A stretch of DNA of 64,000 nt, from the IMG/VR virus record IMGVR_UViG_3300046810_000338, positions 164,500 to 228,499 of that record, one strand, 5' to 3'. Shown in pieces: positions 42,605 to 60,430 of the stretch (the stretch's first letter is position 1; each line of letters starts with the position of its first letter). A program made the position numbers and the translations under genes. Below the pieces are notes generated by a model. That model was not told the origin of the DNA, ran no database searches, and saw nothing but the letters and a program-made list of their open reading frames with translations.

Positions 42605-44308
42605 ATGGCCGGAATCACAACAGATCCAAACATGATCATCGATCCCGATCGGACAACGTTTCATGTTTGGTCAATGCCACAAATTTTTATCCCTGGGGGT
42701 GCGGGTGGTCGTAACGTACCTAACATCGACAACTGGGTGCTGGAATGGTCGACTAAGTCGTATCTGGTTTACCGGGTCATCGACGTTGACTACACCACCG
42801 GCAAGAGTACGTTGCAGCTGAGCCACGAGGTTCCTAATGCAACGGACCTGAGCGAGACAGACATCATTCTGTCGACCTATCCCGGCAAGCCCATCAAAGC
42901 CTTCCGTGCCTACATCGACCGCAGTGTTAAGCCGTCGACCGTATCGATCGATCGGCATCTGTTCGTATTGGGTTCGCTGAGTCGTTATGCCAAGCTGTAT
43001 AAAGGCACCGACATTGGTGTCAACGGTGAGGTCATCTCGGCGATGTACGATCAGGGCAACACACTGATCGGTGAGAACCTGTTGCTGGAGACGGTGGCTA
43101 CAGTTGCTATCCCTTCTGCGGGTGTGGGCGCGGTTATCAACTCAGGCGTCAAGATCGTCAGTCCAGGCTACCTGGCCAAAGACGTGATCGACAACGAAGT
43201 GCTGACGCTGGTCTTCTACGATGACGTGGGTAACATTGTTGAGACTGCCTCGATCGTTGCGTACAACACCTCGTTCTCCAGCCAGCCTGATACCTCGCGC
43301 AAATACGTGAAGGACATCATGCTCGACTCCTCGTTCCTGAGCGAGGGTGATTCGACCAACATCGTGATCCCGCGTAACGTGACACTGGAGTCGATTCTGG
43401 CGTTTGGTAAGGTCCTCTACTCGGACGGTGATACCAAGCAGGTACCAATCGATGGCGGCAAGATGGCGCTGTTCGGTCTTTACAACGACCGCTACATTGC
43501 TAACAGCGATGGCATGCGGGCCAAGGTTGTGCTGCGGTATTTGCTCGACCCGTCAGAGTACCTGTACGGCGCTTCAGTGGGCGAAGCACCCCACATGTCT
43601 AAACCGTACACGGTTGAGACTACCGCGTTCGAGAAGGCCTTTGCAGCTCGTATCTGGGCCTATCCTACATGGGTAGACGAGCTCTCTGGATATCGTATGA
43701 AGTATTATCTTTCGACGTTGAGTCGCGATACTCTCTATGATGTCACTAGCAAGGTGCGCCTGAGCATCAATTCACCTATCTTCGACCCCCTCCTGTATGG
43801 CGCCAGACAGAGCCTTATTCTGACGCTGGACCTTAACACGGTTGACCCTGTGTTCAAGTCCTGGAAGTTCATTCAGCCAACCACCATCACCCTTTACGGG
43901 GAAGGTAATACGGCCAACACTTCTTACACGGTTAACTACGCCCCTGGCGGCGCGACTGTGTTTGGGTTGGACCTTAAAGCCTTGGGCGACTATCGCTCTG
44001 CGGGTAGCTGGCTGCTGGACGTCTCGCAACAGGCAGGCAGTAAAGAAGATTGGTTGGAGAAGATGTTCTACAACACCTTGCCCATCCATAACCCAGCCAA
44101 CGAGTTGCGAGCCCCAGCTCCTACTCACTTCAACCTGGTGATTGCAGGCTTCCGTCAAGAGTTCCCTGTTACGGGGTTCGGAGGTGCATTGCAGATCCAG
44201 GCGCAGCCTAATCCAGGAGAGCCTGTGTTCTTCGAATGGATTCTGCGTGACGGCAACGGTGACCATGCGATGGGTGTTAGTGCCATTCCTTTCTTCCAGA
44301 TCGACTAA
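42605..44308 (+). CDS. Virion structural protein (phiKZ gp26-like)
   Basis: 567 aa; beta-rich; between the gp27-like gene and terminase. Confidence 0.7.
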   Translation: MAGITTDPNMIIDPDRTTFHVWSMPQIFIPGGAGGRNVPNIDNWVLEWSTKSYLVYRVIDVDYTTGKSTLQLSHEVPNATDLSETDIILSTYPGKPIKAFRAYIDRSVKPSTVSIDRHLFVLGSLSRYAKLYKGTDIGVNGEVISAMYDQGNTLIGENLLLETVATVAIPSAGVGAVINSGVKIVSPGYLAKDVIDNEVLTLVFYDDVGNIVETASIVAYNTSFSSQPDTSRKYVKDIMLDSSFLSEGDSTNIVIPRNVTLESILAFGKVLYSDGDTKQVPIDGGKMALFGLYNDRYIANSDGMRAKVVLRYLLDPSEYLYGASVGEAPHMSKPYTVETTAFEKAFAARIWAYPTWVDELSGYRMKYYLSTLSRDTLYDVTSKVRLSINSPIFDPLLYGARQSLILTLDLNTVDPVFKSWKFIQPTTITLYGEGNTANTSYTVNYAPGGATVFGLDLKALGDYRSAGSWLLDVSQQAGSKEDWLEKMFYNTLPIHNPANELRAPAPTHFNLVIAGFRQEFPVTGFGGALQIQAQPNPGEPVFFEWILRDGNGDHAMGVSAIPFFQID

Positions 44309-46522: not shown

Positions 46523-46525
46523 TGG

Positions 46526-46564
46526 CATAAGCCTCCTGCCCACTCAAAGGGCAGGAGGCTTATG
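46526..46564. terminator. Perfect 16-bp stem-loop between convergent genes, CATA/TATG ends
   Basis: CATAAGCCTCCTGCCC-ACTCAAA-GGGCAGGAGGCTTATG. Confidence 0.75.
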
Positions 46565-46567
46565 GTG

Positions 46568-47908
46568 TCACTTGGAAATGTCTTTGCGCAAGCGAGCAAC
46601 GATCTCACGCATTTTGGTACGGGTTTCTGGAGTGACTTCTGGACTCATGGCGAAGACTTCAAAGATCTCCATCTGTTCCTTCAGTGCATCAACTGTCTCC
46701 TTACCCAACACATTGACCAGTTTGTTGAAAGCGGCAACTTCGATGTCTACCATTTCCAGCAACCAGTCGGCAACCTTGACCTTTTCCTTGGTCATGTCGA
46801 TGTATCGAGTGAGAATGTTGTTGGTGTGTTCGGGAACGCCTTCAGTCGCCTTCAGTCGCTTCTCATCGGCCTCAATCAACTTGGCCAACTTAGTCACGTC
46901 ATCAAAGTCTTTGACCAACTTGGAGTTATCAGGAACCCGAACCTTCAAACGCTCGCCAGTGCGCTCACCGACCCGAATGGCCTGGATGAAGTCTTCCAGG
47001 GCCGACCCAACCATACTCGCTGGTGATTTAGCCCAGTCACGGATGTGCATCATCGTGTGCAATGGGTTTGTCTTGTCGGTAAGGGGGATCTCCTGCTGTA
47101 GTTTGAAGTAGCGAACGAACTCTGCCATTTCTGCAATGGCGGGGTTGTTGGATCTACCCATAAACTCGGCCGAGGCCGCCCAGGCTTTCTTGATGGAGAT
47201 GTCGGACTCGTCGCCTTCTTTCATTTTCAAAGCAGCTTCGACAGCCGGCTTAAGGATCTCTTTATAATCCTTGTCCAGATCAATGGTCAGCTTGCTGTAT
47301 ACCTTGGACGCCAGGGAATATACGCCCACTGTACTGTCGACAGAAACATGTGCCAAACTTTCCCAGGCCAGGTTGTTAAGACCGTAACCCTTTAGCCGCT
47401 CAACCACTTCATCCGTGGTCTTCTTCACCTTCTCAACCGATGCGTGGTAGGCTGCGGTGTTCATGGCCAACGCTTCCTTGGCAGCTTTGCCGGCTTCCTC
47501 CTTGCCACCAGTGACCTTGTTCAGGTTATCAACGGCCTTGGCATTTGGAGTTGCCTGTCCTTTACCAGAAGCACGCATCATCAACCAAATGAGCGTACCC
47601 AAGCCTGCAATGACGCCAGCGGCGATGATGACCTTAAGCGTAGTCGACAACGCTTCCTGCGTCATCTCGTAATTGGTGTTGGTAGGCTGGGTCGTAAAGG
47701 ACTCAAGTGCCATGTCGGCAGGCAGGTAGTCTTTGAACTGATTCGCCAGATCAATCGAAACACCGCCAGTGGATTGAAGAAGCTCAAGGCTCATTTCGAC
47801 CTGTGCTCGGTCATCGGCGATCTGAGAAACGAGATCATCGATCTGTTCGATTTCCATGCCCTCCATTGATTCAAGAGTGAGGGTAGAATACTTTTCTGTC
47901 AGTTTCAT
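46568..47908 (-). CDS. Internal head (ejection) protein with acidic propeptide
   Basis: Acidic N-terminus with TLE/SLE/ALE candidate prohead-protease sites, followed by a hydrophobic segment. Confidence 0.65.
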   Translation of the reverse strand: MKLTEKYSTLTLESMEGMEIEQIDDLVSQIADDRAQVEMSLELLQSTGGVSIDLANQFKDYLPADMALESFTTQPTNTNYEMTQEALSTTLKVIIAAGVIAGLGTLIWLMMRASGKGQATPNAKAVDNLNKVTGGKEEAGKAAKEALAMNTAAYHASVEKVKKTTDEVVERLKGYGLNNLAWESLAHVSVDSTVGVYSLASKVYSKLTIDLDKDYKEILKPAVEAALKMKEGDESDISIKKAWAASAEFMGRSNNPAIAEMAEFVRYFKLQQEIPLTDKTNPLHTMMHIRDWAKSPASMVGSALEDFIQAIRVGERTGERLKVRVPDNSKLVKDFDDVTKLAKLIEADEKRLKATEGVPEHTNNILTRYIDMTKEKVKVADWLLEMVDIEVAAFNKLVNVLGKETVDALKEQMEIFEVFAMSPEVTPETRTKMREIVARLRKDISK

Positions 47909-47917
47909 GACAAGTCC

Positions 47918-49231
47918 TTACTTGTAGTAGTTCATGGTCAAGGCACGAACCACGATGTAGAGTTCAAGCGCAGTGCGCAGCGAGGAGATCTGGGTGTCGC
48001 TCTTAGACAGACGAGACTTGGTCACGATCTGCAAGGCCATGTCACGGGCTTTGATCAACCCCGTGTCACGCATCCGAGAGGCCATGTACAGATCCTTAAG
48101 ACGCGAGATCAATACAGCCAGATCATCTACCCGCTTCAATGCCACACGGTTGACCTGGATGTAGTCTACAGCGTGCAGAACCAGTTCCTCTGCCAACTCA
48201 CCCGTAGGTACCTTCATGCGCCCCCTGTGGGCCTCTGAGGTCCACTTGAGCAGTTCTAGGAAAAGGTTGGGCGATACACTGCCCACCATCTCTGTCACGA
48301 TCGTTACACACTCATCACGGATGAATGTGTTGGGGTCTTGCATGACGCCCAGGATGTAAGGCACATAGCGCTTGTTGGCATTCATGTGACTCTTTACCAT
48401 CAACTCACCGTCAATGGTCAGTGTCGAGGTGGTCGTACGAATACGACCGCCGTTACGACGCACATCCAGGTGCACCTGGAAGATCTTCTTCATGACTTCC
48501 CGCAAACGATCCTGAGGCTCGGTTACGGCATAAGTAACCGACACGTCTGGACTGTAGTGCTCAACGCAGGCGTGGTGGATAGCATTTGGCAGAAAGAAAC
48601 GTTCGGCCCGTTGAGTAAACCACACGTCCCATGAACCCGCTTGCTTGATGTCAAACTTCAGCGAGAGCGAGGCATAGGTTGCTTTGGCTTCTTCTACAGA
48701 AGCAGGCTTGTCGTACCAGTGAGACAACAGACTGGTAAACAGCTTAACCTGCAACATGTAGAACACATCAATCTTGGCCTGGATCTTTTTAGCCTGAGAC
48801 AGCTTAGGACTGTTGTGCAGGCGATAGATCAGGTAAAGAGCGGCGGTGTTATACGGGTCACTCAGACGCGCAAAGTCAGATTCGATCAAAGGCGTCTTGA
48901 CGATCTCGGCACGAGCCTCGTTCTCGTCAATACCAATCACGTCTTCAAAGAAGATACTGCGATCGGTTGAGGTATGGCGAACAATCTCCACACCTAACAG
49001 ATTGCCACCAAAGAACGCAATGTGATCTTCGTTCTTGTTGATGAACCCACGTTTGTATTTGGCGATATGCTCAACCAAATAGTTATCTACCACGAGGTCT
49101 TCGCACAGTACGTCAAAGACCTGCTTAATGGTGCCGCCGTCACTAGACAGGGCTTCCAGGGCCATGGAGGCTATGAACCGCCCGGCATCGGCTTCGAGGC
49201 TATCAAAGTCGAAGTTGTAATAGTGATCCAT
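47918..49231 (-). CDS. Conserved jumbo-phage protein, possibly virion-associated
   Basis: 437 aa; NEDHIAFFGGNLLGV motif recalled from phiKZ-like core genes; N-terminal SLE/ALE. Confidence 0.65.
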   Translation of the reverse strand: MDHYYNFDFDSLEADAGRFIASMALEALSSDGGTIKQVFDVLCEDLVVDNYLVEHIAKYKRGFINKNEDHIAFFGGNLLGVEIVRHTSTDRSIFFEDVIGIDENEARAEIVKTPLIESDFARLSDPYNTAALYLIYRLHNSPKLSQAKKIQAKIDVFYMLQVKLFTSLLSHWYDKPASVEEAKATYASLSLKFDIKQAGSWDVWFTQRAERFFLPNAIHHACVEHYSPDVSVTYAVTEPQDRLREVMKKIFQVHLDVRRNGGRIRTTTSTLTIDGELMVKSHMNANKRYVPYILGVMQDPNTFIRDECVTIVTEMVGSVSPNLFLELLKWTSEAHRGRMKVPTGELAEELVLHAVDYIQVNRVALKRVDDLAVLISRLKDLYMASRMRDTGLIKARDMALQIVTKSRLSKSDTQISSLRTALELYIVVRALTMNYYK

Positions 49232-49280
49232 TATAGAAGTCCCTTGAGGGTAGGCTTGGCTATAGGATACGAGAAAAAGT

Positions 49281-49344
49281 CAGACCTAGATTATCTTAGT
49301 GCAGACCCTATATAAAGAAATTTCAAACCTATATTCTTGCTGTG
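49281..49344 (+). promoter_or_regulatory. Two tandem putative early promoters (ACCT-N11-GTG)
   Basis: CAGACCTAGATTATCTTAGTG and CAAACCTATATTCTTGCTGTG; the second contains TATATT, like the phiKZ early promoter TATATTAC. Confidence 0.55.
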
Positions 49345-49384
49345 AATGAGTTGAATAAACAATCTCGTTCATCTATCTAACCAG

Positions 49385-49398
49385 GTTCTAAGGAGAAC
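49385..49398 (+). promoter_or_regulatory. SD-occluding mini-hairpin (prototype of a repeated element)
   Basis: GTTCT-AAGG-AGAAC. Variants at 49751, 50706, 51206, 51760, 52095, 52597, 53429, 55106 and 55304. Confidence 0.75.
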
Positions 49399-49402
49399 TA
49401 AC

Positions 49403-49699
49403 ATGTCCATTACTACCACTATCGCCACTACCCTGAACAACATCTTCGCCCTCACTCGGGTTAAAGAGGTTACTCTGAAAGTCAATCAACCAGAAGCTCT
49501 GACCTACATTGAGACGGTTGAGGCTGGCGGGGTAATTAAGCGTCACGGCATCACCGTTACTTTCAATAACTTCCTGAACCCCTCTATGGGTTACAAACAG
49601 GTTGTACTCTGGAAGTACATGCAGCGCATGGCTAAATCCAATAACTTGGGTGAGCTGCGCGTCATCAACTTCAACGGCGAGATCTACTCCGTCGAGTAA
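49403..49699 (+). CDS. Hypothetical early protein
   Basis: 98 aa; AAGGAG RBS. Confidence 0.75.
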   Translation: MSITTTIATTLNNIFALTRVKEVTLKVNQPEALTYIETVEAGGVIKRHGITVTFNNFLNPSMGYKQVVLWKYMQRMAKSNNLGELRVINFNGEIYSVE

Positions 49700-49708
49700 T
49701 AGTAACAT

Positions 49709-49738
49709 CCTTAGCCTAACAATGGTGTTAGGCTAAGG
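49709..49738 (+). terminator. Intergenic stem-loop (no U-tract)
   Basis: CCTTAGCCTAACA-ATGG-TGTTAGGCTAAGG. Confidence 0.55.
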
Positions 49739-49769
49739 CTTACCTTCCAAGTCCTAAGGAGGACATGTC

Positions 49770-50651
49770 ATGAAACAAGCGAACATTACTTTCATCGAAG
49801 ATGCTGAAGGCGCCCTGATCTTTCAATACGAAGGTCGCAAGTATCTCTACGCTGGTCGTAAAGAGGGGACCATGTATGGTATCTCCACCATTCGTGAAGA
49901 ATGGAAGGAACTGCTGGAAGATGCTGGCAATCGTTCTTACGAGAAGGTTGGTAAGCGGGCTGTGGAGATTGGTCTGGACTTTGTATGTTTTGACCTGGGC
50001 GTCATTAACATCGACGCGGTGGCCAAGGTCACGGATCTAATGGAGACCTACGATGACTTCGAAGGTCTGGGTGTAATGTCAATCAGCAAAACCGATTGCC
50101 GTTCTCCAGACGGCATCACGATCGGTTTGATCGACGGCATGATCGCCATGGCTCGGGTTCTGCGTAAAGCCAACCTGGGCTCGGCAGAGGTACAAGAGGC
50201 TCTGAAGGACTTCACTACCGATGAGGATGTGAAGTGGTTGATGGAGCAGTCTGTACAGAACTGGGACTTCGAAGAGGACGCTAGCTGGCAACTGGGTGAT
50301 CCACTTCACCCAGTGGTCGTTCCTGAAACGGCTCCTCAGCCAGCCCTCGAATCTTCCAAAGATGGCAAGTACATGGTGGAGTATTGCCAGAAGACTTGGC
50401 CAGTCGGTTGGGATCACCAGGACTCGACCATCGAGTTTGACAGTCGGGATGAAATGACCACCTGGCTGGTGAACAAGATCGAGTGGTGCAAGTACGAAGA
50501 TAACGGCTTCCGTTGCCGCGTCTATTTGTACAAGGACAACTTTCCTTACTCGATCGGCAAAGGTGAATGGACTGACAAGCAGTTCAAAGACGTTGGCATG
50601 GGTTGTAAACCAACGGTTGAAGTCCTCGCCGACATGGAATGGATGAAGTAA
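49770..50651 (+). CDS. Hypothetical early protein
   Basis: 293 aa; AAGGAGG RBS. Confidence 0.75.
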   Translation: MKQANITFIEDAEGALIFQYEGRKYLYAGRKEGTMYGISTIREEWKELLEDAGNRSYEKVGKRAVEIGLDFVCFDLGVINIDAVAKVTDLMETYDDFEGLGVMSISKTDCRSPDGITIGLIDGMIAMARVLRKANLGSAEVQEALKDFTTDEDVKWLMEQSVQNWDFEEDASWQLGDPLHPVVVPETAPQPALESSKDGKYMVEYCQKTWPVGWDHQDSTIEFDSRDEMTTWLVNKIEWCKYEDNGFRCRVYLYKDNFPYSIGKGEWTDKQFKDVGMGCKPTVEVLADMEWMK

Positions 50652-50664
50652 AGCTGAATAGTAC

Positions 50665-50700
50665 CCCAGTCTCCCAATAGTGGGAGACTGGGTTTTATAC
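50665..50700 (+). terminator. Intergenic stem-loop followed by TTTTATAC
   Basis: CCCAGTCTCCCA-ATAG-TGGGAGACTGGG. Confidence 0.65.
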
Positions 50701-50723
50701 CCTCGGTTCTAAGGAGAACTAAA

Positions 50724-51212
50724 ATGGTTACTGATATTCGTGATCCGTTGGATAATGTTACCATGGTTGCCAAGCTGTTTGCAGGCTTCGTTGCCTCTGG
50801 TGATCTGGTGCTTGAACCGGAAGTTGATAATGAGGCTGCTCTGCGCAACTACCATCGTTGCCGCGAGTTCGCCAAGGGGCGTGGGTTGCCGGGTGCCAAT
50901 CTGGAAGAAGACATGGATCTGGTCAAGATCGCTCGTCTGCGCAGTGCTGCTCAGATCCTGTCAGCCTTTACCAAAGACGATGTCCATCGCATGAAGGACT
51001 ATATCTCGGTCGAAGGTGCCAAGAACAATTTGCAGGCACTGTGTCGCGCAGTCGAATTGGGTATGGTAGAATTCAAACCGTTGACCAGCAATGAGGTCTA
51101 CGTTGAGAACTGCCGTATCGCCAACGAATTCTTGAGCCTGCCAAACCCTTTCACTCCACCGCCTGCGCCTACCAAGCCTTTGCTTTCGGTTATCAAATCT
51201 ACCAAGTTCTAA
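50724..51212 (+). CDS. Hypothetical early protein
   Basis: 162 aa; AAGGAG RBS. Confidence 0.75.
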   Translation: MVTDIRDPLDNVTMVAKLFAGFVASGDLVLEPEVDNEAALRNYHRCREFAKGRGLPGANLEEDMDLVKIARLRSAAQILSAFTKDDVHRMKDYISVEGAKNNLQALCRAVELGMVEFKPLTSNEVYVENCRIANEFLSLPNPFTPPPAPTKPLLSVIKSTKF

Positions 51213-51222
51213 GGAGAACAAG

Positions 51223-51711
51223 ATGGACGTACATTTCAAAGTTGACAATCGGAATACTCTCGGGAAGTTTCCTCTGGCCGCCTACATTCAGGCACCCAAG
51301 GTCGATGTCGATCTTTTTCGCAGGGAGCTGCACTGGGTCAGTGAGAAGTTTGAGAGCGAAGCTCTGCGTGCAGAGAAGATGTTCTACATCGCTTACGAAC
51401 ACGGTGGCGATGCGCTGATAGTCGAACTGATCGATCTGGCTAAGCGCTGCACCCCAGATCTGGGGATTGCTAAGACCACCGACAACCAATTCGTGTTCAG
51501 GCATGTTCTACTGCATGGTATCGACGTCACTCAGGACGACCAGTACAAGTGCCTGTATGCAGTTCACATGCTGCAACAGATTCTTAGTTTTGCTGCACTG
51601 CCTGACGGTCCTGGTGAAGAAGGTCATCTGGACTTCGTTGCCAAAGCGTTTGACACGTTGGTTGATCGCCTGCGTGCAACTGTCAAGACCATGAACAAGC
51701 TTCAAGGTTAA
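51223..51711 (+). CDS. Hypothetical early protein
   Basis: 162 aa; AAGGAG RBS. Confidence 0.75.
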   Translation: MDVHFKVDNRNTLGKFPLAAYIQAPKVDVDLFRRELHWVSEKFESEALRAEKMFYIAYEHGGDALIVELIDLAKRCTPDLGIAKTTDNQFVFRHVLLHGIDVTQDDQYKCLYAVHMLQQILSFAALPDGPGEEGHLDFVAKAFDTLVDRLRATVKTMNKLQG

Positions 51712-51721
51712 CCTGAAATAC

Positions 51722-51755
51722 CCCAGCCCATCATTTCGATGGGTTGGGTTTATAC
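51722..51755 (+). terminator. Intergenic stem-loop followed by TTTATAC
   Basis: CCCAGCCCATC-ATTTC-GATGGGTTGGG. Confidence 0.6.
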
Positions 51756-51776
51756 TCGCGATTCTAGGAGAATCAC

Positions 51777-52091
51777 ATGGAATACGTACAAGCTGCTCTG
51801 ATCATTGCTCTTTGCTTAGCTACTCTGCTACGTGTTGTTTACTGGGCTGTACATGGTGGCGCTTACGTTCGTTCGGTAGGCGTCATGTTCAAGGCTGCAA
51901 GTCGTGGTGAGGATTACTACGAAGTTGTGGTTGGCGGTACTCGGCTGCGCAAGGTGTTAGAAGTTGAGGCTACTCTGTCTCCTCTGCACAGCGAACACGC
52001 ACTGCGTCGCCGCATCTGGCGGATGGCAAAACGGTGTGAACCAAAAATCAGTCGGATCAGCTATGCTGGTCACGTCTACGCTTACAATTAA
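51777..52091 (+). CDS. Hypothetical protein with N-terminal membrane anchor
   Basis: AALIIALCLATLLRVVYWAV hydrophobic segment. Confidence 0.7.
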   Translation: MEYVQAALIIALCLATLLRVVYWAVHGGAYVRSVGVMFKAASRGEDYYEVVVGGTRLRKVLEVEATLSPLHSEHALRRRIWRMAKRCEPKISRISYAGHVYAYN

Positions 52092-52115
52092 TCCTAGTTC
52101 AAAGGAGAACTAAAC

Positions 52116-52523
52116 ATGGCTCTTAAAGATTACATCCTGCTGATCAAAAAGAACAAACCGGTCCTGCTGGCTGTCGGCATGACCGTGCTGTTGGTTCCGG
52201 CGCTCATCACCTACTGGCTCTACAGCTGGCTGGGTGAGAGCGCTGTCACCTGGCTGACTCTCTGGAGCGTCATCTTCATGGAGGGAGTGCGCTTCTTCGT
52301 CGGTCGCTCTGCCGATTTCAAGGCAGGGGTTGCAAAGTCGTTGTCCAAGGTTTTCGCTGCCCAGGGTTACATGCTCTCCTGTCGCATCTGCTCTATCGTC
52401 GTTACCATCGGCCTGCTTTATGCCGGCTGGTGGATGTGCGCTGTGCTCACGCTGGTTGTGTGGTACCAGTTTGAAAGCTTGGTCAAGGCGGCTAGCAAGC
52501 CTGCCGATGGCGTAACCTTCTAA
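52116..52523 (+). CDS. Multi-pass membrane protein
   Basis: 135 aa with 3-4 hydrophobic segments. Confidence 0.75.
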   Translation: MALKDYILLIKKNKPVLLAVGMTVLLVPALITYWLYSWLGESAVTWLTLWSVIFMEGVRFFVGRSADFKAGVAKSLSKVFAAQGYMLSCRICSIVVTIGLLYAGWWMCAVLTLVVWYQFESLVKAASKPADGVTF

Positions 52524-52615
52524 CACCCTAGGGCTCTCCGGGAGAGAGCCCGCTCTTAAGTGCATTGATTTCCAGTGTACTTAAAAGTCGTATCCCATTT
52601 CTAAGGAGAAATACC

Positions 52616-53170
52616 ATGACTCATCCATCCTACAACGCTGTACAGAACGCCACTCTGGAAGCTGGCTCCATTGCATTCGATCCCAAGAAAGATCAGCCCG
52701 CCGGCTACGGTATCTTTCTTAACGTCTTCTACCTCGCCGAACACCGCAAGCATGCCGATAACTTGCCGTGCATCGAAATCCTCGAAGGCGACATGGAGCA
52801 CAATGACTACTACGGTCCTCTGACTCGTCGCAACCTGCGTCTGAAAGTGGGCACTCTGGTGCGGGCAGTGTCGCCTGGCAAGAACAACCGTCGGATGTTG
52901 ATCCTTGCTGGTCACACCGGCAACCTGGTTCTGTTCGAACGTTACACCGGTGGCGACAAAGGCGTGCTCGTCATGAACGTTCCTCGCGAATACACCCATC
53001 TGTTCGGTGGTTCGGCGTCTACTGAACACGACGTGCAATTGATGACGGGTGGTCTGTGGGGTACCAACGTCGTGCAGATCATGACCGACGTCATGCGCAC
53101 CTTCATCACCACCGACTTCTCTGGCGACCAAATCGTCACTAACAACGATCGGGATCTTGACGATGAGTAA
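52616..53170 (+). CDS. Hypothetical early protein
   Basis: AAGGAG RBS; ATG at 52616 (MTHPSY); GNLVLFERY motif. Confidence 0.75.
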   Translation: MTHPSYNAVQNATLEAGSIAFDPKKDQPAGYGIFLNVFYLAEHRKHADNLPCIEILEGDMEHNDYYGPLTRRNLRLKVGTLVRAVSPGKNNRRMLILAGHTGNLVLFERYTGGDKGVLVMNVPREYTHLFGGSASTEHDVQLMTGGLWGTNVVQIMTDVMRTFITTDFSGDQIVTNNDRDLDDE

Positions 53171-53387
53171 TTTAAACGTTGACTACGAACCGGATGAGAT
53201 CCGCGATAACCTTTCCCCTGCCGAACAAGCGGTCTACGACAAAAACGTTGCCGCCGATATTCGGATCATCATGTCCGACCAAGCCATTCGTGACCGCCTG
53301 GTCGGTCCGTGGGATGGTGAAGGCTGGGATGAGGGTATGGACGAAGTCACCCGCCTGCAACGCATCAACATGATGCCTGTCAAGTAA
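53163..53387 (+). CDS. Small acidic hypothetical protein
   Basis: ATG at 53163 overlaps the end of the previous gene. Confidence 0.6.
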   Translation: MSNLNVDYEPDEIRDNLSPAEQAVYDKNVAADIRIIMSDQAIRDRLVGPWDGEGWDEGMDEVTRLQRINMMPVK

Positions 53388-53392
53388 TCTAC

Positions 53393-53420
53393 AGTCTGGG
53401 CCACAAAGGTGGCCCAGACT
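53393..53420 (+). terminator. Intergenic stem-loop (no U-tract)
   Basis: AGTCTGGGCCAC-AAAG-GTGGCCCAGACT. Confidence 0.55.
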
Positions 53421-53447
53421 ACATCCATGGTTCTAAGGAGAATTAAA

Positions 53448-55076
53448 ATGTCTAATGAAAGCAAAGTTTTGGTAAACGGTACTCCAATGGAAGCCGTCTT
53501 CCCTGAAGGGACTGAAGTGGTCGCCGACGACAAAGTTCGTTACACCATCGTTCATGGTCGCTGGGTTCCAGAAGGTGCAGTACAAAAGGCACTGTCCTGC
53601 ATTCATCTGGACGCGTCTGCCAATCGCATGGAATTGATGAACGCCATGCTCGACGGCAAAACAAAAGTTACTGGCAAGCCCTACCCGTTCCCACCGTTTC
53701 CTCTTGATGGCACCGAGGAAACAAATCGAACAGAGTTGTCTCCAGAAGAAAAGGCCAGTCTGTTCATTGCTAACGAATGCGGTGCAGTCAGTGAGGCGAC
53801 CCACGCGATCCTCGTTGAACACATCGTTAACGAACGCAAGGCGCCAGTCACCGAATTGCCGGAACCGGCGTTGTCTACCATTCAAAAATACGCTAATTTC
53901 CGCGACATCGGTGCTCTGGAAATCGGTGGCGGTGGTTCCCAAAAACACTACCAAACGCCAAGTAAGACCCGAGTCGAGCTGGAACAGGAACTTTCCAGTT
54001 TCATGTTCCTTATGGCAACCGGTAAGGAGATGCCAGAGGACCCTTTGGACAAGGCGCTCATCATGGCCAACACGTTCCTGCCAACCAGCCCAAAGCTGAA
54101 TGCCATTATCAGCCGGGCCGAGGAGCTGCACCCTGGCTTAAAGGCTCGGTTGTTTATGTCGGTGGAAGGCAAGCCGGATTTTGCTATTGGCGATGTAGAC
54201 CCGGAACTGCTTCCAGCTCTGTCTCAGGCACTCAAGGAATACAGCGCTCCGCCTGCACCAGAATCGCTCTTTGCCCATGAGCCCATTCTGGCCAGCAATC
54301 GCAAGACACCGGCAGAGATGGCGCAGGATGGTTACTGCTTCGGTACGGAAACCAGCACCCTGGTTCCCTCCGATGATGAACCAGTTATCGTTGTGGCGGC
54401 AGGACATCTTGCCGAGGTGGAACAACAACGCGGTGTTCATCGTGAAGGACGTGGCTTCGTAACCCGCCGCGTGATCATGGCTGAATCCAGCACACCTTTC
54501 ACAGGGCGCAACGTGATAACCTCGCCACCACCAATTGTCGAGGATTTGTCGCTGTTAATAACCGCGTGGAAGGTCATGGGGTTAGATCCTGACAACCTGC
54601 ACCGTGAGAGCTGGCACCTGGACATCGGCAGTAACCGTGCTCACAAACTCTTTGTCCAAGAACTGGAAAAGTGTCTGGATTCGGCTGGTAAGCTTTTTAT
54701 CGGTCCGGATGAACTCGCCGAATGGTACGACATGTTGAAGCTGCCGATCCGCGGCATTCTTCAACAACGCAGGCCAACTATCTATTACCCAGAGGACCAA
54801 ACGCTTAAACACGCTTGGGACAAAATGGGTTTAGACTTTGCGCGTCTTCCAGAACGTGATCGCAATCTCAACATCGCCGACTATTCTGCATGGATGCTGT
54901 TCGTTGCTGAGATTCGTAAACTGTTTCTCGATGAGAACGGCGTCGATTGGTTAAAGCCAATCGACAATGAACTGCTCAGCAAAATCCTCGCCCATCCCAT
55001 CGAAGACATTCTGGACATTATGCCCAGAGAGAGTTTGGATGAAATGTTGGCAGAAAATAAATCCTACAATGCCTGA
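53448..55076 (+). CDS. Hypothetical multi-module protein with duplicated C-terminal domain
   Basis: ATG at 53448 after AAGGAG; AWKVMGLD...WHLDI versus AWDKMGLD...RNLNI. Confidence 0.75.
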   Translation: MSNESKVLVNGTPMEAVFPEGTEVVADDKVRYTIVHGRWVPEGAVQKALSCIHLDASANRMELMNAMLDGKTKVTGKPYPFPPFPLDGTEETNRTELSPEEKASLFIANECGAVSEATHAILVEHIVNERKAPVTELPEPALSTIQKYANFRDIGALEIGGGGSQKHYQTPSKTRVELEQELSSFMFLMATGKEMPEDPLDKALIMANTFLPTSPKLNAIISRAEELHPGLKARLFMSVEGKPDFAIGDVDPELLPALSQALKEYSAPPAPESLFAHEPILASNRKTPAEMAQDGYCFGTETSTLVPSDDEPVIVVAAGHLAEVEQQRGVHREGRGFVTRRVIMAESSTPFTGRNVITSPPPIVEDLSLLITAWKVMGLDPDNLHRESWHLDIGSNRAHKLFVQELEKCLDSAGKLFIGPDELAEWYDMLKLPIRGILQQRRPTIYYPEDQTLKHAWDKMGLDFARLPERDRNLNIADYSAWMLFVAEIRKLFLDENGVDWLKPIDNELLSKILAHPIEDILDIMPRESLDEMLAENKSYNA

Positions 55077-55124
55077 TCGTCATTAGACGAAGGCATCTAT
55101 CTCCATTTTCTTAAGGCAGAAAAG

Positions 55125-55310
55125 ATGAAAAATGTAATCGCAGTAGTAACCGGGTTGATCCTTGGCGCAGCGCTCATGGCTGGCCATTACGAGAAGCCCG
55201 GTGTTGCACAGGATCGTTCAACGGTCGTTGTGGGTCATCGTGTGGCCCCCAATGGTCAACAAATGGTTAGCTTTGCAGACGGCCATGTTATCACCGTACT
55301 GCAATTCTAA
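55125..55310 (+). CDS. Small secreted or membrane-anchored protein
   Basis: MKNVIAVVTGLILGAALMAG is signal-peptide-like. Confidence 0.65.
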   Translation: MKNVIAVVTGLILGAALMAGHYEKPGVAQDRSTVVVGHRVAPNGQQMVSFADGHVITVLQF

Positions 55311-55320
55311 GGAGAGTGTT

Positions 55321-55614
55321 ATGCAACAGCAGTTTAAAGTATTGGAAAGCAGTCTGCGGACTGTGCTGGATGAGGCACCTGCTTTGCTTCATCACGAAGA
55401 GCTGAGCCCTTGTTTGAAGATGGCGTTGCTGAACAGCCTTCGTAACGACTTGGCAGATTTGCTCAATCGTATTGCCAATCTGTCTGGGCAGTCGCCAGAG
55501 ACTCACACCAACATTTTCCGAGAGGCCAGTCGCTTCTGTTTGCAAGTGAGCGACCTGAATAAGCCATCGCAGGGTATGTGGAGAATGGAACATGGCGGTT
55601 ATGGTGGCTTCTAA
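55321..55614 (+). CDS. Hypothetical protein
   Basis: AAGGAG RBS; ATG at 55321. Confidence 0.65.
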   Translation: MQQQFKVLESSLRTVLDEAPALLHHEELSPCLKMALLNSLRNDLADLLNRIANLSGQSPETHTNIFREASRFCLQVSDLNKPSQGMWRMEHGGYGGF

Positions 55615-55873
55615 GTCCTGGGTTGATCCAGCCTTTGCCAGGCTGCAAATGATGAGCCTGGTTGTTCAGGCTCAGTATCTTCACCGAGCATTGTCGGGCA
55701 AGCCCACCTTGCTCAACCTGATGCTCGACAACATCAAGCAGGAATCGGACCACTGGGTTCGGTTCCTGCCTAAAATGGACCATCCGGTCTACGTGATTGC
55801 AACGCCGTTCGATCCCAATCGGGAACGATCGGTGGATGAATTCCCAATTGAATTTAAGGAGTTAGTACCATGA
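55592..55873 (+). CDS. Hypothetical protein
   Basis: 93 aa; overlap-packed. Confidence 0.6.
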   Translation: MAVMVASKSWVDPAFARLQMMSLVVQAQYLHRALSGKPTLLNLMLDNIKQESDHWVRFLPKMDHPVYVIATPFDPNRERSVDEFPIEFKELVP

Positions 55874-56244
55874 CCATGATGAACATTTTTACCCGAGGAG
55901 CGCGCACCATGCCAACTGAAGAAGAGTACCACCCAATCCTGTTCGTGCGTAACGAAAAGGATGAGCACGTCCCAGTGGACAACAATCCCCTGTGGATTGC
56001 CAAGCTGGGTCAGGTCATTGACCGTGGGGAATCCTTTGCCGACCTGATCGGCCCACTGCTGGTCCGTCGCGGGTGCGAAGGAGACTGGCATTATTACCCA
56101 GCTCCATTTCTGTTCAAGTCTCCTGAAGAACGCCGGGTTGCAGCCACTCGCCGTGGCAAGAACCCACCCGCAGAGCCATGGGTCCGCCGTAAGCTGGCCC
56201 TGCTCTATCGACTGGCTCGCCGTGAATATAAACTGGTGGCCTAA
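55870..56244 (+). CDS. Hypothetical protein
   Basis: AAGGAG RBS; ATGA overlap. Confidence 0.65.
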   Translation: MTMMNIFTRGARTMPTEEEYHPILFVRNEKDEHVPVDNNPLWIAKLGQVIDRGESFADLIGPLLVRRGCEGDWHYYPAPFLFKSPEERRVAATRRGKNPPAEPWVRRKLALLYRLARREYKLVA

Positions 56245-56307
56245 ATATAACAGGAGTATTTCACTCACTTACTTACTTTCAACTTTGCTGGTAGCCGAGG
56301 GGGGTAC

Positions 56308-56784
56308 ATGAAAATTGGATGTTGCGAACATGTTTCCTCCCTTGTAGCCAAAGAGGTCGGCTTACAATGGACTGGTCGGAAAATGGCCCTAAGAGACTTA
56401 GGGCCAACTGATCGGGTAACAGGTTTATTTTTTGTCTCCACGTACATTGACTTGTCCTTGGATGAGTACATTTATTTGATTGACCATCTTTCTCTGTTGA
56501 CGATGTTCAATGGAATACGATGCAAGATCCCCGCGTTCCATTTCAACTCTGCCATGGTCAGCTATTTGGAGCATGCCGGACATCGGTATTGGTACATCGC
56601 TGTCAATGGAGAACTGGTGAGAATAAGAGAGATGACCATGACCAAGCTGTCCAATCGATTGAACATCAACCTCGATGAAGACATCCGTCATTGCTTTGAT
56701 CAGCTCTTCATTCACTCCCCAGTAGAAGCCCGTCAAACTTACATGCCTCAACGTGGTAAAACACCTCGATTGAAATGGTCGTAA
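56308..56784 (+). CDS. Hypothetical protein
   Basis: 158 aa; GAGGGG RBS. Confidence 0.65.
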   Translation: MKIGCCEHVSSLVAKEVGLQWTGRKMALRDLGPTDRVTGLFFVSTYIDLSLDEYIYLIDHLSLLTMFNGIRCKIPAFHFNSAMVSYLEHAGHRYWYIAVNGELVRIREMTMTKLSNRLNINLDEDIRHCFDQLFIHSPVEARQTYMPQRGKTPRLKWS

Positions 56785-56789
56785 TACTC

Positions 56790-56830
56790 TGCCTGTACAG
56801 CCGCTACTGCGGCTGTACAGGCATTATGCC
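56790..56830 (+). terminator. Perfect 15-bp stem-loop followed by TTATGCC
   Basis: TGCCTGTACAGCCGC-TACT-GCGGCTGTACAGGCA. Confidence 0.7.
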
Positions 56831-57961: not shown

Positions 57962-57995
57962 TGGTCCGTCCCTTAGGGGGCGGGCCACTATGCCG
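57962..57995 (+). terminator. Stem-loop followed by CTATGCCG
   Basis: TGGTCCGTCCC-TTAG-GGGGCGGGCCA. Confidence 0.6.
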
Positions 57996-58033
57996 TAATT
58001 GTATAAGACCCCCAACCTATTAGGAGCTTTACC

Positions 58034-60393: not shown

Positions 60394-60430
60394 CCCTCCT
60401 TCCCTTTAGGGGGAAGGAGGGCTTATGCCG
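60394..60430. terminator. Stem-loop between convergent genes, flanked by CATA/TATGCC
   Basis: CCCTCCTTCCC/GGGAAGGAGGG. Confidence 0.7.

What the first reader, a model, noticed from the sequence alone, without database searches (positions are those of the whole stretch)
49385..55317. Covarying Shine-Dalgarno-occluding hairpin on ten genes of one block: a candidate translational regulon
Seen: most independently initiated genes in this block have their SD inside a small hairpin. The copies are GTTCT-AAGG-AGAAC (49385, 50706, 51206), GTCCT-AAGG-AGGAC (49751), GATTCT-AGG-AGAATC (51760), TAGTTC-AAAGGA-GAACTA (52095), ATTTCT-AAGG-AGAAAT (52597), GGTTCT-AAGG-AGAATT (53429), TTTTCT-TAAGGC-AGAAAA (55106) and ATTCT-AAGG-AGAGT (55304). 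The differences are compensatory (T-A to C-G, G-C to T-A) or G-U wobbles, so structure rather than sequence alone appears conserved. The copies at 51206 and 55304 are maintained even while overlapping the upstream stop codon. Core-gene SDs I checked (about 19146 and 25250) lack the stem; weaker candidates occur at 28991 and before terL at 44342. Established: CsrA/RsmA proteins bind ANGGA presented in SD hairpin loops, and T4 RegB cleaves GGAG in early SDs. Inference: these unrelated genes share a post-transcriptional switch read by a host Rsm protein, a phage RNA-binding protein or nuclease, or an sRNA.
Basis: partly seen in the sequence, partly recalled or inferred. Interest (0 to 1): 0.82.

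Follow-up and report, generated by a model that had tools for sequence, protein, structure and literature searches.

The report
Shared ribosome-site hairpin on phage genes
Ten neighbouring genes of unknown function in an uncultured giant (phiKZ-like) phage each carry the same small RNA hairpin around their ribosome-binding site. Related giant phages keep this hairpin through compensating mutations, so it is a real and previously undescribed control element for one class of phage genes, but what reads it is still unknown.

Summary
All ten hairpins lie at the stated coordinates. SD hairpins occur at 11 of 12 gene starts in 49403-55614, against 6 of 60 elsewhere, which is the chance level (Fisher p 4.5e-8). 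A covariance model finds copies only in 49372-55324 (+).

The window is the last 64 kb of an uncultured phiKZ-like jumbo phage. Eight related metagenomic jumbo-phage contigs carry the same hairpin with other stems (GTCCT/AGGAC, GATCT/AGATC, ATCCT/AGGAT, ATTCC/GGAAT), including at orthologous genes. Pairing beats partner shuffles (50 fully paired against 16.3; covariation 0.323 against 0.191, 0 of 500).

The element is larger than described. A G-free, C-rich tract precedes a WAGG tetraloop hairpin, an A-rich spacer and the ATG. Runs of these cassettes start 53-62 nt after a conserved vRNAP-type promoter-like motif, so the block is probably an early operon. Structural genes, and the two closest cultured phages, lack the cassette.

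The hairpins are weak (-0.9 to -4.9 kcal/mol) and cannot silence translation alone.

- **Best reading:** an mRNA-level gate or operator at the ribosome-binding site for one gene class, probably clamped by an unidentified factor.
- **Main rival:** a factor-free, standardised ribosome-binding site with a standby tract.
- **CsrA and RegB:** the defining features tested were not met.

No Rfam family or publication was found.

The parts
49281..49295 (+). Promoter-like motif CAGACCTAGATTATC. It is an exact match to the clade consensus CARACCTANAWTAYC and is the upstream member of a tandem pair.
   Evidence: The same motif occurs at 5166-5180 in the other divergent intergenic region.
49324..49338 (+). 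Promoter-like motif CAAACCTATATTCTT, orthologous to the motif heading the hairpin runs in relatives. It is followed by GTGAATGA. The transcription start is inferred at about 49344, which is 6 nt after the motif.
   Evidence: the motif lies 53-62 nt before the first hairpin in 10 loci. vRNAP promoters of phiKZ-like phages are extended, AT-rich, conserved motifs with the start 6 nt downstream (PMC5312081, PMC7598289). The start position is an inference.
49384..49399 (+). Hairpin 1, GGTTCT-AAGG-AGAACT, within cassette 49372-49405. It serves gene 49403-49699.
   Evidence: 33.6 bits. The isolated stem is -2.5 kcal/mol and P(stem) in context is only 0.07.
49709..49738 (+). Intercistronic GC-rich stem-loop with a 13-bp stem and no T-run.
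   Evidence: Sequence; intergenic listing.
49751..49764 (+). Hairpin 2, GTCCT-AAGG-AGGAC, within cassette 49738-49771. It serves gene 49770-50651.
   Evidence: 32.5 bits. Stability is -4.9 kcal/mol and P(stem) is 0.86-0.94. Orthologues in L122, L123 and L124 have the same stem.
50665..50692 (+). Intrinsic-terminator-like stem-loop, 12 bp followed by TTTTAT.
50705..50720 (+). Hairpin 3, GGTTCT-AAGG-AGAACT, within cassette 50693-50726. It serves gene 50724-51212.
   Evidence: 31.0 bits. Stability is -4.1 kcal/mol.
51206..51219 (+). Hairpin 4, GTTCT-AAGG-AGAAC, within cassette 51193-51226. The TAA stop of the upstream gene (51210-51212) spans the last base of the 5' arm and the first two loop bases. 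It serves gene 51223-51711.
   Evidence: 33.5 bits. P(stem) is 0.95. The orthologue L118:1988 has GATCT/AGATC.
51722..51748 (+). Intrinsic-terminator-like stem-loop, 11 bp followed by TTTAT.
51760..51774 (+). Hairpin 5, GATTCT-AGG-AGAATC, with a 3-nt loop. It serves gene 51777-52091.
   Evidence: 12.7 bits; not in the training set. Homologues in L106 and L118 have GTCCT/AGGAC or TGTTCT/AGAACA.
52095..52112 (+). Hairpin 6, TAGTTC-AAAGGA-GAACTA. The inner pair is lost and the stem is extended outward. It serves gene 52116-52523.
   Evidence: 28.3 bits. Orthologues have GTTCT/AGAAC in L122 and L123 and AGATCT/AGATCT in L124.
52531..52551 (+). Intercistronic GC-rich stem-loop, GGGCTCTC-CGGGA-GAGAGCCC.
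   Evidence: Sequence.
52597..52612 (+). Hairpin 7, ATTTCT-AAGG-AGAAAT. It serves gene 52616-53170.
   Evidence: 26.4 bits. Stability is -1.8 kcal/mol.
53393..53420 (+). Intercistronic GC-rich stem-loop with an 11-bp stem.
53428..53445 (+). Hairpin 8, TGGTTCT-AAGG-AGAATTA, including a G-U pair. It serves gene 53448-55076.
   Evidence: 25.5 bits. P(stem) is 0.9. Homologues have GTCCT/AGGAC or GATCCT/AGGATC.
55106..55123 (+). Hairpin 9, TTTTCT-TAAGGC-AGAAAA, with a weakened SD. It serves gene 55125-55310.
   Evidence: 14.1 bits; not in the training set. Orthologues in L122, L123 and L124 have GTCCT-AAGG-AGGAC, so several pairs have been exchanged.
55304..55317 (+). Hairpin 10, ATTCT-AAGG-AGAGT, with one U-G pair. 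The TAA stop of the upstream gene (55308-55310) spans the last base of the 5' arm and the first two loop bases. It serves gene 55321-55614. This is the weakest copy.
   Evidence: 19.0 bits. Stability is -0.9 kcal/mol and P(stem) in context is 0. It has no C-tract upstream.

Best explanation
The hairpin is the 3' half of a roughly 30-nt mRNA leader module attached to genes of unknown function. These genes sit in putative early operons of a clade of uncultured phiKZ-like jumbo phages.

The module has four parts, 5' to 3':
- A G-free, C/A/U-rich tract that is mostly single-stranded.
- A 5-7 bp stem whose tetraloop (A/U)AGG and 3' arm AG(R)AC present a maximal Shine-Dalgarno, UAAGGAG(G).
- An A-rich spacer.
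- The AUG.

It acts on the RNA at the ribosome-binding site. The closed stem competes with 30S binding. The 30S can dock on the unpaired flank and invade through the exposed AAGG.

The stems alone are too weak to silence translation, yet their shape is kept by compensatory change on dozens of unrelated genes. I therefore think the module is most likely a common operator. An unidentified trans-acting binder, more likely phage-encoded than host-encoded, would clamp the stem-loop to time or shut off translation of this gene class.

Shown:
- The hairpin exists, it is specific to one gene class, pairing covaries, and the element is conserved across the clade.
- It is linked to a promoter-like motif at the head of each operon.

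Inferred:
- The genes are expressed early.
- The element acts on RNA.
- A clamp exists.
For: - **Specificity within the window.** SD hairpins occur at 11 of 12 block gene starts against 6 of 60 elsewhere, p 4.5e-8. The ten best hits of model R1 all lie in 49372-55324 (+).
- **Selection on pairing.** Among 110 gene starts with a WAGGRG SD, chosen blind to pairing, 50 are fully paired against 16.3 with shuffled partners (maximum 25 of 5000).
- **Covariation.** The score is 0.323 against 0.191 +/- 0.015 (0 of 500), and the named register beats every slid register.
- **Two classes of site.** The number of Watson-Crick pairs is bimodal: 46, 8, 1, 20, 21 and 13 sites have 5, 4, 3, 2, 1 and 0 pairs.
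- **Independent structure prediction.** RNAalifold returns the same helix, with 4 of 5 pairs compensated.
- **Orthologous genes.** They keep the hairpin with exchanged pairs: GTTCT/AGAAC with GATCT/AGATC, and GTCCT/AGGAC with TTTTCT/AGAAAA or GATTCT/AGAATC.
- **Loop length varies** (AGG, AAGG, TAAGG). This argues against a fixed-spacing DNA operator.
- **Fixed geometry.** The position relative to SD and ATG is constant, and the SD is the strongest in the genome.
- **The 5' flank.** It is G-poor (0-5 G of 50 at positions -19 to -11, up to 8 at -15) and predicted to be less paired than its surroundings in 8 of 10 copies. CA-rich single-stranded tails 5' of a structured ribosome-binding site strongly promote initiation (PMC5934652).
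- **Operon position.** Hairpin runs start 53-62 nt after a conserved promoter-like motif in 10 loci, so the hairpin lies inside the transcript.
- **Contrast with late genes.** Structural genes lack the hairpin. Several gene starts carry a TATG phiKZ-late-type motif instead, often directly after a terminator stem-loop (PMC7598289).
- **Precedents for class-wide control at the ribosome-binding site.** T4 RegA and RegB act on early mRNAs (PMC3014915). RsmA clamps an unstable SD hairpin in pslA (PMC7652899). ChmC of chimalliviruses binds near start codons (PMC11077065).
Against: - No expression, 5'-end or binding data exist, because the clade is uncultured.
- No candidate binder was found among the window proteins scanned. 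Only 64 kb of the 228 kb genome was readable.
- SD constraints alone fix two to three of the five pairs, so the free covariation rests mainly on the outer pairs and the middle Y:R pair.
- G-U against A-C mismatch counts are too few to prove RNA rather than DNA pairing: 3 G-U or U-G against 2 A-C or C-A among the 8 sites with four Watson-Crick pairs.
- Two of the ten window copies are predicted not to fold in context.
- A factor-free role explains the same anatomy.
- Some operons with the same promoter-like motif have no hairpins, for example the one starting at 5285.
Confidence: 0.4

Rival explanations
1. The RNA module is the same, but no regulator is involved. It is a standardised, self-insulating ribosome-binding site for genes that are shuffled between phages. 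The weak local stem keeps a very strong SD from mispairing with arbitrary neighbouring sequence and shields the A/U-rich site. The G-free flank is a standby platform. The AAGG loop is a toehold through which the 30S opens the stem. Expression is therefore independent of context.
For: - The stems are uniformly weak, -0.9 to -4.9 kcal/mol, and never long.
- They are tied to the strongest SDs.
- The 5' tract is G-poor and mostly unpaired. CA-rich standby tails are known to work (PMC5934652).
- The cassettes sit on genes of unknown function in a region whose gene content differs between 76%-identical relatives, and the differences lie at cassette boundaries. This resembles the PeSL cassettes of T4-type phages (PMC4122927).
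- No binder was found.
Against: - A benefit this subtle would have to maintain compensatory pairing on dozens of genes across phages whose core proteins are only 35-50% identical.
- The outer stem pairs are more conserved in sequence (G:C and U:A in about 80-90% of copies) than a purely structural role requires.
- Other genes in the same operons do without the hairpin.
Confidence: 0.3
2. Host CsrA/RsmA reads the hairpins. It binds the GGA in the loop and represses these mRNAs, or is titrated by them.
For: - The site has AAGGA overlapping the SD at the top of a short stem of about 5 bp.
- CsrA prefers GGA in the loops of short hairpins.
- RsmA can stabilise an otherwise unstable SD hairpin, as in pslA (PMC7652899).
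Against: - The ACA element, invariant in SELEX ligands, is absent; the 5' arm is GUYCU.
- The loop is a tetraloop, not the usual hexaloop.
- The A of GGA is base-paired, and pairing of the GGA motif lowers affinity (PMC7652899).
- There is no second GGA 10-63 nt away: mean 1.0 per site against 1.55 expected, and 4 of 10 sites have none.
- The host is unknown.
Confidence: 0.08
3. The hairpin is the target of, or a shield against, a RegB-like endoribonuclease that cuts GG/AG in early Shine-Dalgarno sequences to end early expression.
For: - The 3' half of the motif, GGAG-R-A-C followed by an A-rich spacer, matches the T4 RegB/S1 strong-site consensus GG*AGRAYARAA.
- That consensus is found in intergenic early-gene SDs (PMC3014915).
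- The block is probably early.
Against: - In T4, secondary structure protects against RegB, and the strong sites are unstructured (PMC3014915).
- The RAC part is equally explained by pairing with the 5' arm.
- No RegB-like family was seen among the window proteins scanned.
- Positions +7 to +10 are only about 50% A.
Confidence: 0.07
4. The inverted repeat works on DNA or during transcription. It could be an operator for a dimeric DNA-binding protein, or part of a promoter or initially transcribed region for the phage RNA polymerase. It would overlap the SD only because the leader is short.
For: - The hairpin is tightly coupled to the upstream T/A + CCCC tract and often lies 8-15 nt after terminator-like stem-loops.
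- phiKZ nvRNAP promoters are minimal, and efficiency depends on undefined downstream sequence (PMC12809450).
- The block has no sigma-70-like promoter (0 against 4.4 expected).
Against: - The first cassette of each run lies 53-62 nt downstream of a separate, well-conserved promoter-like motif, so it is within the transcript.
- The C-tract and the hairpin occur independently of each other: C-tract without hairpin at L124:16023 and the L122:21050 family; hairpin without C-tract in L077 and at 55304.
- Several stem variants and loop lengths (3, 4, 5 and 6 nt) coexist within one genome. This is incompatible with one fixed-spacing operator.
- G-U pairs are tolerated.
Confidence: 0.08
5. Pairing has no function. 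The motif is a repeated sequence spread by duplication or recombination of a cassette, or it is a by-product of a U-rich enhancer upstream and an A-rich spacer downstream of a strong SD.
For: - Five copies share an exact 12-mer.
- The 5' arm is T-rich and the 3' arm A-rich.
- Gene content differs at cassette boundaries.
Against: - Shuffling partners between sites, which keeps composition, gives 16.3 fully paired sites against 50 observed. Column shuffles never reach the observed covariation (0 of 500).
- Orthologous sites show double substitutions that keep pairing, including U:A to A:U flips and G:C to U:A exchanges. Composition cannot explain these.
- The number of Watson-Crick pairs per site is bimodal.
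Confidence: 0.03

Closest known systems
Structured ribosome-binding site with a standby site (MS2 coat cistron; tisB). Reference: PMC5934652.
   Same: - A stem-loop embraces the SD.
- A single-stranded, CA-rich or AU-rich flank 5' of it lets the 30S dock and wait for opening.
- The context is a phage.
   Different: - The known cases are single genes with stable stems (about -10 kcal/mol) that also bury the AUG.
- Here the stems are weak (-0.9 to -4.9 kcal/mol) and the AUG is free.
- The module is repeated on dozens of unrelated genes.
T4 class-wide control of early mRNAs at the ribosome-binding site: RegA repressor and RegB/S1 endonuclease. Reference: PMC3014915.
   Same: - One trans factor acts on the initiation regions of many early mRNAs.
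- The RegB strong-site consensus GG*AGRAYARAA resembles the 3' half of this motif.
   Different: - RegA and RegB sites are unstructured, and structure protects from RegB.
- No regA or regB homologue was seen in the window.
- Here the conserved feature is a base-paired stem.
CsrA/RsmA sites, including RsmA-stabilised SD hairpins such as pslA. Reference: PMC7652899.
   Same: GGA overlaps the SD at the top of a short, marginally stable hairpin. Clamping of such a hairpin blocks the ribosome.
   Different: - There is no ACA.
- The loop is a tetraloop, not a hexaloop.
- The A of GGA is paired.
- There is no second site.
- The host is unknown.
PeSL/PmSL composite regulatory cassettes of T4-type phages. 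Reference: PMC4122927.
   Same: - Short repeated regulatory cassettes (stem-loop, expression signals, SD, ATG) precede variable genes of unknown function in hyperplastic regions.
- They are associated with gene gain and loss.
   Different: - The PeSL stem-loop is a terminator upstream of a sigma-70-like promoter, and the SD is unstructured.
- Here the promoter-like motif occurs only at the operon head.
- The conserved small stem-loop contains the SD itself.
T4 gene e, soc and 49 inhibitory hairpins at the ribosome-binding site. Reference: PMC3014915.
   Same: The SD is sequestered in a helix in one transcript class, which gives temporal control of translation in a phage.
   Different: - Those are gene-specific helices relieved by late promoters that start inside the helix.
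- Here one stereotyped hairpin is shared by many genes, and no internal promoter is evident.

Membership tests
CsrA/RsmA binding site | GGA single-stranded in the loop of a short hairpin, usually a hexaloop. | tested here: not met
   The loop is (A/U)AGG, 4 nt, in 47 of 47 aligned copies. The A of GGA pairs with the U of the 5' arm in 44 of 47. Pairing of GGA lowers affinity (PMC7652899).
CsrA/RsmA binding site | An ACA element 5' of GGA (SELEX consensus RUACARGGAUGU, with ACA invariant). | tested here: not met
   The 5' arm consensus is G-U-Y-C-U, with C invariant at -4 and U in 48 of 50 at -3. No ACA is present.
CsrA/RsmA binding site | A second GGA site 10-63 nt away for dual-site bridging. 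This is common but not obligatory. | tested here: not met
   The mean is 1.0 extra GGA per site against 1.55 expected from composition. Four of ten sites have none.
CsrA/RsmA binding site | Binding by CsrA or RsmA and csrA-dependent expression. | not testable with these tools
   This needs gel shifts and reporter assays. The host is unknown.
T4 RegB/S1 cleavage site | GGAG in an intergenic SD of early genes, with 3' context RAYARAA. | tested here: inconclusive
   GGAG-R-A-Y holds in nearly all copies. Positions +7 to +10 are only about 50% A. The RAY part is also explained by pairing. Early class is inferred, not shown.
T4 RegB/S1 cleavage site | The site is unstructured, because structure protects from cleavage. 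| tested here: not met
   AG of GGAG is in the stem, and P(stem) is at least 0.5 in 8 of 10 copies in at least one of the two contexts tested. Reference: PMC3014915.
T4 RegB/S1 cleavage site | A regB-type nuclease gene in the phage. | tested here: inconclusive
   None was found among the window proteins scanned against Pfam and PHROGs. Three large proteins (UvsX-like 625-2133, 42674-44308 and terL) were not scanned against Pfam individually. 164 kb of the genome was not readable.
Structured ribosome-binding site with standby site (MS2 coat type) | The SD lies within a stem-loop. | tested here: met
Structured ribosome-binding site with standby site (MS2 coat type) | An adjacent single-stranded tract able to hold a 30S subunit. 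| tested here: inconclusive
   The tract is G-poor. The predicted unpaired probability is above the local mean in 8 of 10 copies. This is prediction only.
Structured ribosome-binding site with standby site (MS2 coat type) | The stem is stable enough to be inhibitory without standby (about -6 kcal/mol or stronger), and the AUG is included. | tested here: not met
   Stability is -0.9 to -4.9 kcal/mol, and the AUG lies 1-5 nt outside the stem.
PeSL-type mobile regulatory cassette | A terminator stem-loop plus an early promoter plus the SD and ATG, repeated before variable genes. | tested here: not met
   Stem-loops and SD cassettes are repeated. The promoter-like motif, however, is found only at the head of each run, and no sigma-70-like promoter is present.
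PeSL-type mobile regulatory cassette | Association with gene gain and loss between close relatives. | tested here: met
   Genes 49403-49699 and 52616-53170 have no counterpart in the relatives. Homologues of 51223 and 51777 lie in a second cluster about 60 kb away in the relatives.
phiKZ-type vRNAP (early) promoter, for the operon-head motif | An extended, conserved, AT-rich motif upstream of early operons, with the transcription start 6 nt downstream. | tested here: inconclusive
   CARACCTAtAaTACC is conserved in at least 10 loci, including Xoo-sp14, and a conserved G/TGAA follows about 6 nt downstream. The start site and timing cannot be tested here (PMC5312081).
Any Rfam family | A match to a curated covariance model. 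| tested here: not met
   There was no relevant match in 48800-56400 at E <= 1.

The most novel reading that the evidence does not exclude
A clade of uncultured phiKZ-like jumbo phages marks a set of early accessory mRNAs with a dedicated initiation code: a G-free tract followed by an SD-tetraloop hairpin. A conserved phage-encoded factor would read this code. That factor could be an RNA-binding protein or a ribosome-modifying protein. It would give these mRNAs privileged or timed access to ribosomes, in a life cycle where transcription and translation are physically uncoupled. This would be a new translational regulon with a structured operator.
Probability: 0.2. Interest if true: 0.85.

Novelty: new variant of a known kind. 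Interest (0 to 1): 0.62.

Why it matters
Nucleus-forming and related jumbo phages transcribe with their own polymerases and, in the characterised members, separate transcription from translation. How they control translation of their many early genes of unknown function is almost unknown. ChmC binds near start codons, but no motif has been found for it (PMC11077065).

A stereotyped, covarying hairpin at the ribosome-binding site, shared by dozens of unrelated genes across a clade, is a concrete handle:
- **Gene class.** It defines a gene class from sequence alone.
- **Expression part.** It offers a compact expression part (standby tract, toehold hairpin and maximal SD).

If it is factor-free, it is still a natural example of a standardised, insulated ribosome-binding site on mobile gene cassettes.

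Tried and rejected
- **Nucleotide relatives among cultured phages.** None was found.
- **Close relatives from single proteins.** Searches with terL or the 542-aa protein found only the window's own contig. An alignment-based search was needed.
- **N4-type DNA hairpin promoter.** I considered this at first because of the 2338-aa ORF. That ORF is a phiKZ-type tail fibre/transglycosylase and the phage is phiKZ-like, so I dropped the idea.
- **Hairpin as the 5' end of each mRNA, made from a 'TAT-N-CCC' promoter analogous to the late TATG promoter.**
  - The spacing between TAT and CCC varies.
  - The AT part is often just the terminator T-tail.
  - The first cassette of each run lies 53-62 nt after a separate promoter-like motif.
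  - I kept it only as a minor rival.
- **sRNA pairing.** No sequence complementary to the motif occurs on either strand of the window. The rest of the genome was not readable.
- **Function of the block proteins.** There were no significant PHROG or Pfam matches (the only hits, DUF883 at 22.4 bits and DUF4335 at 13 bits, fall below the curated cut-offs) and no ESM Atlas leads.
- **G-U against A-C mismatch counts to separate RNA from DNA pairing.** There were too few cases.
- **Hairpin at the 46568-47908 (-) gene (ACAAGT-AAGG-ACTTGT).** It is absent in relatives and consistent with the chance rate.
- **Other copies of the 16-mer in the same genome.** None was found.
- **RNA thermometer and attenuator readings.** I did not pursue these. 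There is no U-tract after the small stem. The 5' arm pairs with AGAAC rather than with the GGA core.

Full report
**What the window is.** The window is the last 64 kb of IMG/VR contig IMGVR_UViG_3300046810_000338, which is 228,499 bp long.
- It belongs to a phiKZ-like jumbo phage. The large terminase is 43% identical to those of Xanthomonas phage Xoo-sp14 and Erwinia jumbo phages.
- Other phiKZ-type genes are split RNA polymerase beta-type subunits, a tail sheath, a PhiKZ vertex protein and an S80 prohead protease.
- No cultured phage is similar at the nucleotide level.

**Observation.**
- The 12-mer TTCTAAGGAGAA with up to 2 mismatches occurs 13 times, against 3.4 +/- 1.7 in shuffles. Nine of the 13 lie in the block.
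- A stem of at least 5 bp around the SD GG is present at 11 of 12 gene starts between 49403 and 55614. Elsewhere it is present at 6 of 60, which equals the flank-shuffle expectation of 5.85 +/- 2.2 (Fisher p 4.5e-8).
- Shuffling the flanks of the block RBSs gives a mean of 0.87 and at most 5 of 12 in 2000 trials.
- A covariance model built from 47 copies was run with filters off on both strands. Its ten best window hits all lie in 49372-55324 (+), including two copies that were not used for training.

**Relatives and covariation.** An exact-motif scan of IMG/VR and an alignment-based terL search found two groups of relatives.
- Three contigs are about 76% identical in terL: 3300042923_000474, 3300011774_000001 and 3300038441_001309.
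- Several more distant contigs are mostly of jumbo size. Two of them, 3300011906_000002 and 3300036944_001167, have core proteins 35-51% identical to those of the window.
- All of them carry the SD hairpin, but with other stems. GTCCT/AGGAC dominates in the close relatives, whereas the window has GTTCT/AGAAC. GATCT/AGATC, ATCCT/AGGAT, ATTCC/GGAAT and loops of AGG, AAGG, TAGG or TAAGG also occur.

To avoid circularity I took every called gene start that has a WAGGRG Shine-Dalgarno, regardless of pairing. This gave 110 sites.
- 50 are fully paired in the canonical register. Exchanging 3' arms among sites gives 16.3, with a maximum of 25 in 5000 trials.
- The number of Watson-Crick pairs per site is bimodal. 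Counts are 46, 8, 1, 20, 21 and 13 for 5, 4, 3, 2, 1 and 0 pairs.
- On that blind alignment the covariation score is 0.323 against 0.191 +/- 0.015 (0 of 500 shuffles). Cells changed on both sides number 76 against 36.9. The named register beats every slid register.
- RNAalifold independently returns the same five pairs, four of them compensated.
- Orthologous genes keep the hairpin while exchanging pairs:
  - The 52116 family has GTTCT/AGAAC, AGATCT/AGATCT and, in the window, TAGTTC...GAACTA.
  - The 55125 family has GTCCT/AGGAC against TTTTCT/AGAAAA.
  - The 51223 family has GTTCT against GATCT.
  - The 51777 family has GATTCT against GTCCT.

Pairing is therefore under selection. One caveat is that close relatives contribute non-independent rows.

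**Anatomy beyond the finding.** The hairpin is the 3' half of a cassette of about 30 nt.
- Positions -19 to -8 relative to the GG are G-poor, with a T/A-rich part and a C-tract (C in 33-40 of 50 copies at -12 to -10). Two A's follow.
- Next comes G-T-Y-C-T / WAGG / A-G-R-A-C, then an A-rich spacer and the ATG.
- An extended pattern that includes the tract (CCCA-N-GTCCTAAGGAGGAC) is almost confined to this clade in all of IMG/VR. It gives 15 matches, 13 of them in the three relatives.
- The tract and the hairpin can each occur without the other.
- In the window the cassettes follow GC-rich intercistronic stem-loops, two of them terminator-like with T-tails. Alternatively they overlap the TAA stop of the upstream gene, as at 51206 and 55304.
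- The block has no sigma-70-like promoter, against 4.4 expected.

**Operon context.** A conserved motif, CARACCTAtAaTACC, is followed about 6 nt later by G/TGAA.
- It lies 53-62 nt upstream of the first hairpin of a run in ten loci. In the window it is at 49324-49338, with a second exact copy at 49281-49295 and another at 5166-5180. It also occurs in Xoo-sp14.
- This fits the description of virion-RNA-polymerase early promoters of phiKZ-like phages: extended, AT-rich, conserved motifs with the start 6 nt downstream (PMC5312081, PMC7598289).
- In contrast, several gene starts carry (C)TTATGCC, often directly after a terminator stem-loop. This contains the phiKZ late-promoter core TATG (PMC7598289, PMC12809450).
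- I therefore infer that the block is an early operon and that the hairpins lie inside its transcript. This is an inference; no RNA data exist.
- Not every operon with this promoter-like motif has hairpins. The one starting at 5285 does not.

**Energetics.**
- In isolation the stems are worth -0.9 to -4.9 kcal/mol.
- In context they form with probability of at least 0.5 in 8 of 10 copies in at least one of the two contexts tested. Copies 49385 and 55304 fold poorly.
[quoted passage not shown] 'Occluding' is therefore too strong a word.
- The G-poor flank is predicted to be less paired than its surroundings in 8 of 10 copies. CA-rich single-stranded tails 5' of a structured RBS strongly promote initiation by ribosome standby (PMC5934652).

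**Mechanism.** The fixed geometry with the SD and the ATG points to an RNA-level role at the RBS. So do the varying loop lengths, the coexistence of several stem variants in one genome, the occasional G-U pairs and the position inside the transcript.

Two versions fit equally well on anatomy:
- **(a) A common operator.** A trans factor clamps the stem for class-wide timing or shut-off. Precedents are T4 RegA and RegB (PMC3014915), RsmA on pslA (PMC7652899) and ChmC binding near start codons in chimalliviruses (PMC11077065).
- **(b) A factor-free, standardised RBS.** A standby tract and a toehold hairpin serve genes that are shuffled between phages, in the manner of PeSL cassettes (PMC4122927).

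I rank (a) slightly higher (0.40 against 0.30). The reasons are that the hairpin is class-specific and that the outer pairs are more conserved in sequence than structure alone requires. Nothing here demonstrates a reader.

- **CsrA/RsmA.** The invariant ACA is absent. The loop is a tetraloop. The A of GGA is paired. Second GGA sites are not enriched (PMC7652899).
- **RegB.** The 3' half (GGAG-R-A-C, then A-rich) resembles the RegB/S1 strong-site consensus GG*AGRAYARAA. However, RegB sites are unstructured, and no nuclease homologue was seen among the window proteins scanned (PMC3014915).
- **sRNA.** No complementary sequence occurs in the window.

**Novelty.**
- No Rfam family matches.
- No cassette is found in 91 kb of the two closest cultured phages or elsewhere in the phage collection.
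- My literature searches found no description of it.
- It is a new variant of known kinds (structured RBS, translational operator, repeated regulatory cassette), not a new category.

Noticed in passing
window 5166-5180, 49281-49295 and 49324-49338 (+); also L122:14935, L123:16279, L124:14012, L118:1549, L106:157, L072:2289, L015:5856 and 9727, L014, L092:597, L135:30853: A conserved promoter-like motif, (T)CARACCTAtAaTACC, is followed about 6 nt later by G/TGAA. It lies in divergent intergenic regions and at the head of every hairpin run, and it is also present in the cultured phage Xoo-sp14. It fits the description of vRNAP early promoters of phiKZ-like phages.
   Followed up: partly
window about 4610-4618, 8228-8239, 26826-26832, 30421-30427, 35756-35762, 46523-46567 (both strands), 56816-56822, 57993-57999 and 60424-60430: GC-rich terminator stem-loops are followed immediately by (C)TTATGCC or TATGC. 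This contains the phiKZ late-promoter core TATG and suggests back-to-back terminator and late-promoter units. Several lie beside structural genes. TTATGCC is not enriched overall (11 against about 8 expected); it is the position right after the stems that stands out.
   Followed up: partly
window 52556-52586 (+); L122 about 16905-16940; L124:16537-16565: A second conserved hairpin (window AAGTGCA...TGTACTT; relatives TTATGCACA...TGTGCATAA) lies between a GC stem-loop and the 52597 cassette. It shows compensatory differences between the window and the relatives. In the relatives its 5' arm contains a TTATGC late-promoter-like motif. It could be a leader structure or a small RNA.
   Followed up: no
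window 49403-49699 and 52616-53170, compared with L122-L124, L106 and L118: Gene content differs from the 76%-identical relatives exactly at cassette boundaries. Two window genes have no counterpart in the relatives. Homologues of 51223 and 51777 lie in a second hairpin cluster about 60 kb away in the relatives. This is consistent with cassette-flanked gene shuffling.
   Followed up: partly
L122:19620-19640, L123 about 21235-21250 and L124:19375-19395: One gene family in the relatives has a variant SD hairpin in another register: (A/G)ACC-AAAGGA-GGTT, or GACC-GGA-GGTT in L123. The whole GGA is in the loop, and it is preceded by CATCCATGA. This form is closer to a CsrA-type hexaloop.
   Followed up: no
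window 47910-47925 (-): A perfect 6-bp SD hairpin, ACAAGT-AAGG-ACTTGT, precedes gene 46568-47908 and overlaps the stop codon of the upstream gene. It is not conserved in the relative L122 and is not detected by the model. It is compatible with the chance rate of about 6 per 60 genes.
   Followed up: yes
window 49150-55700: The block contains no sigma-70-like promoter match, against 4.4 +/- 2.4 in shuffles. This fits transcription independent of the host polymerase.
   Followed up: no
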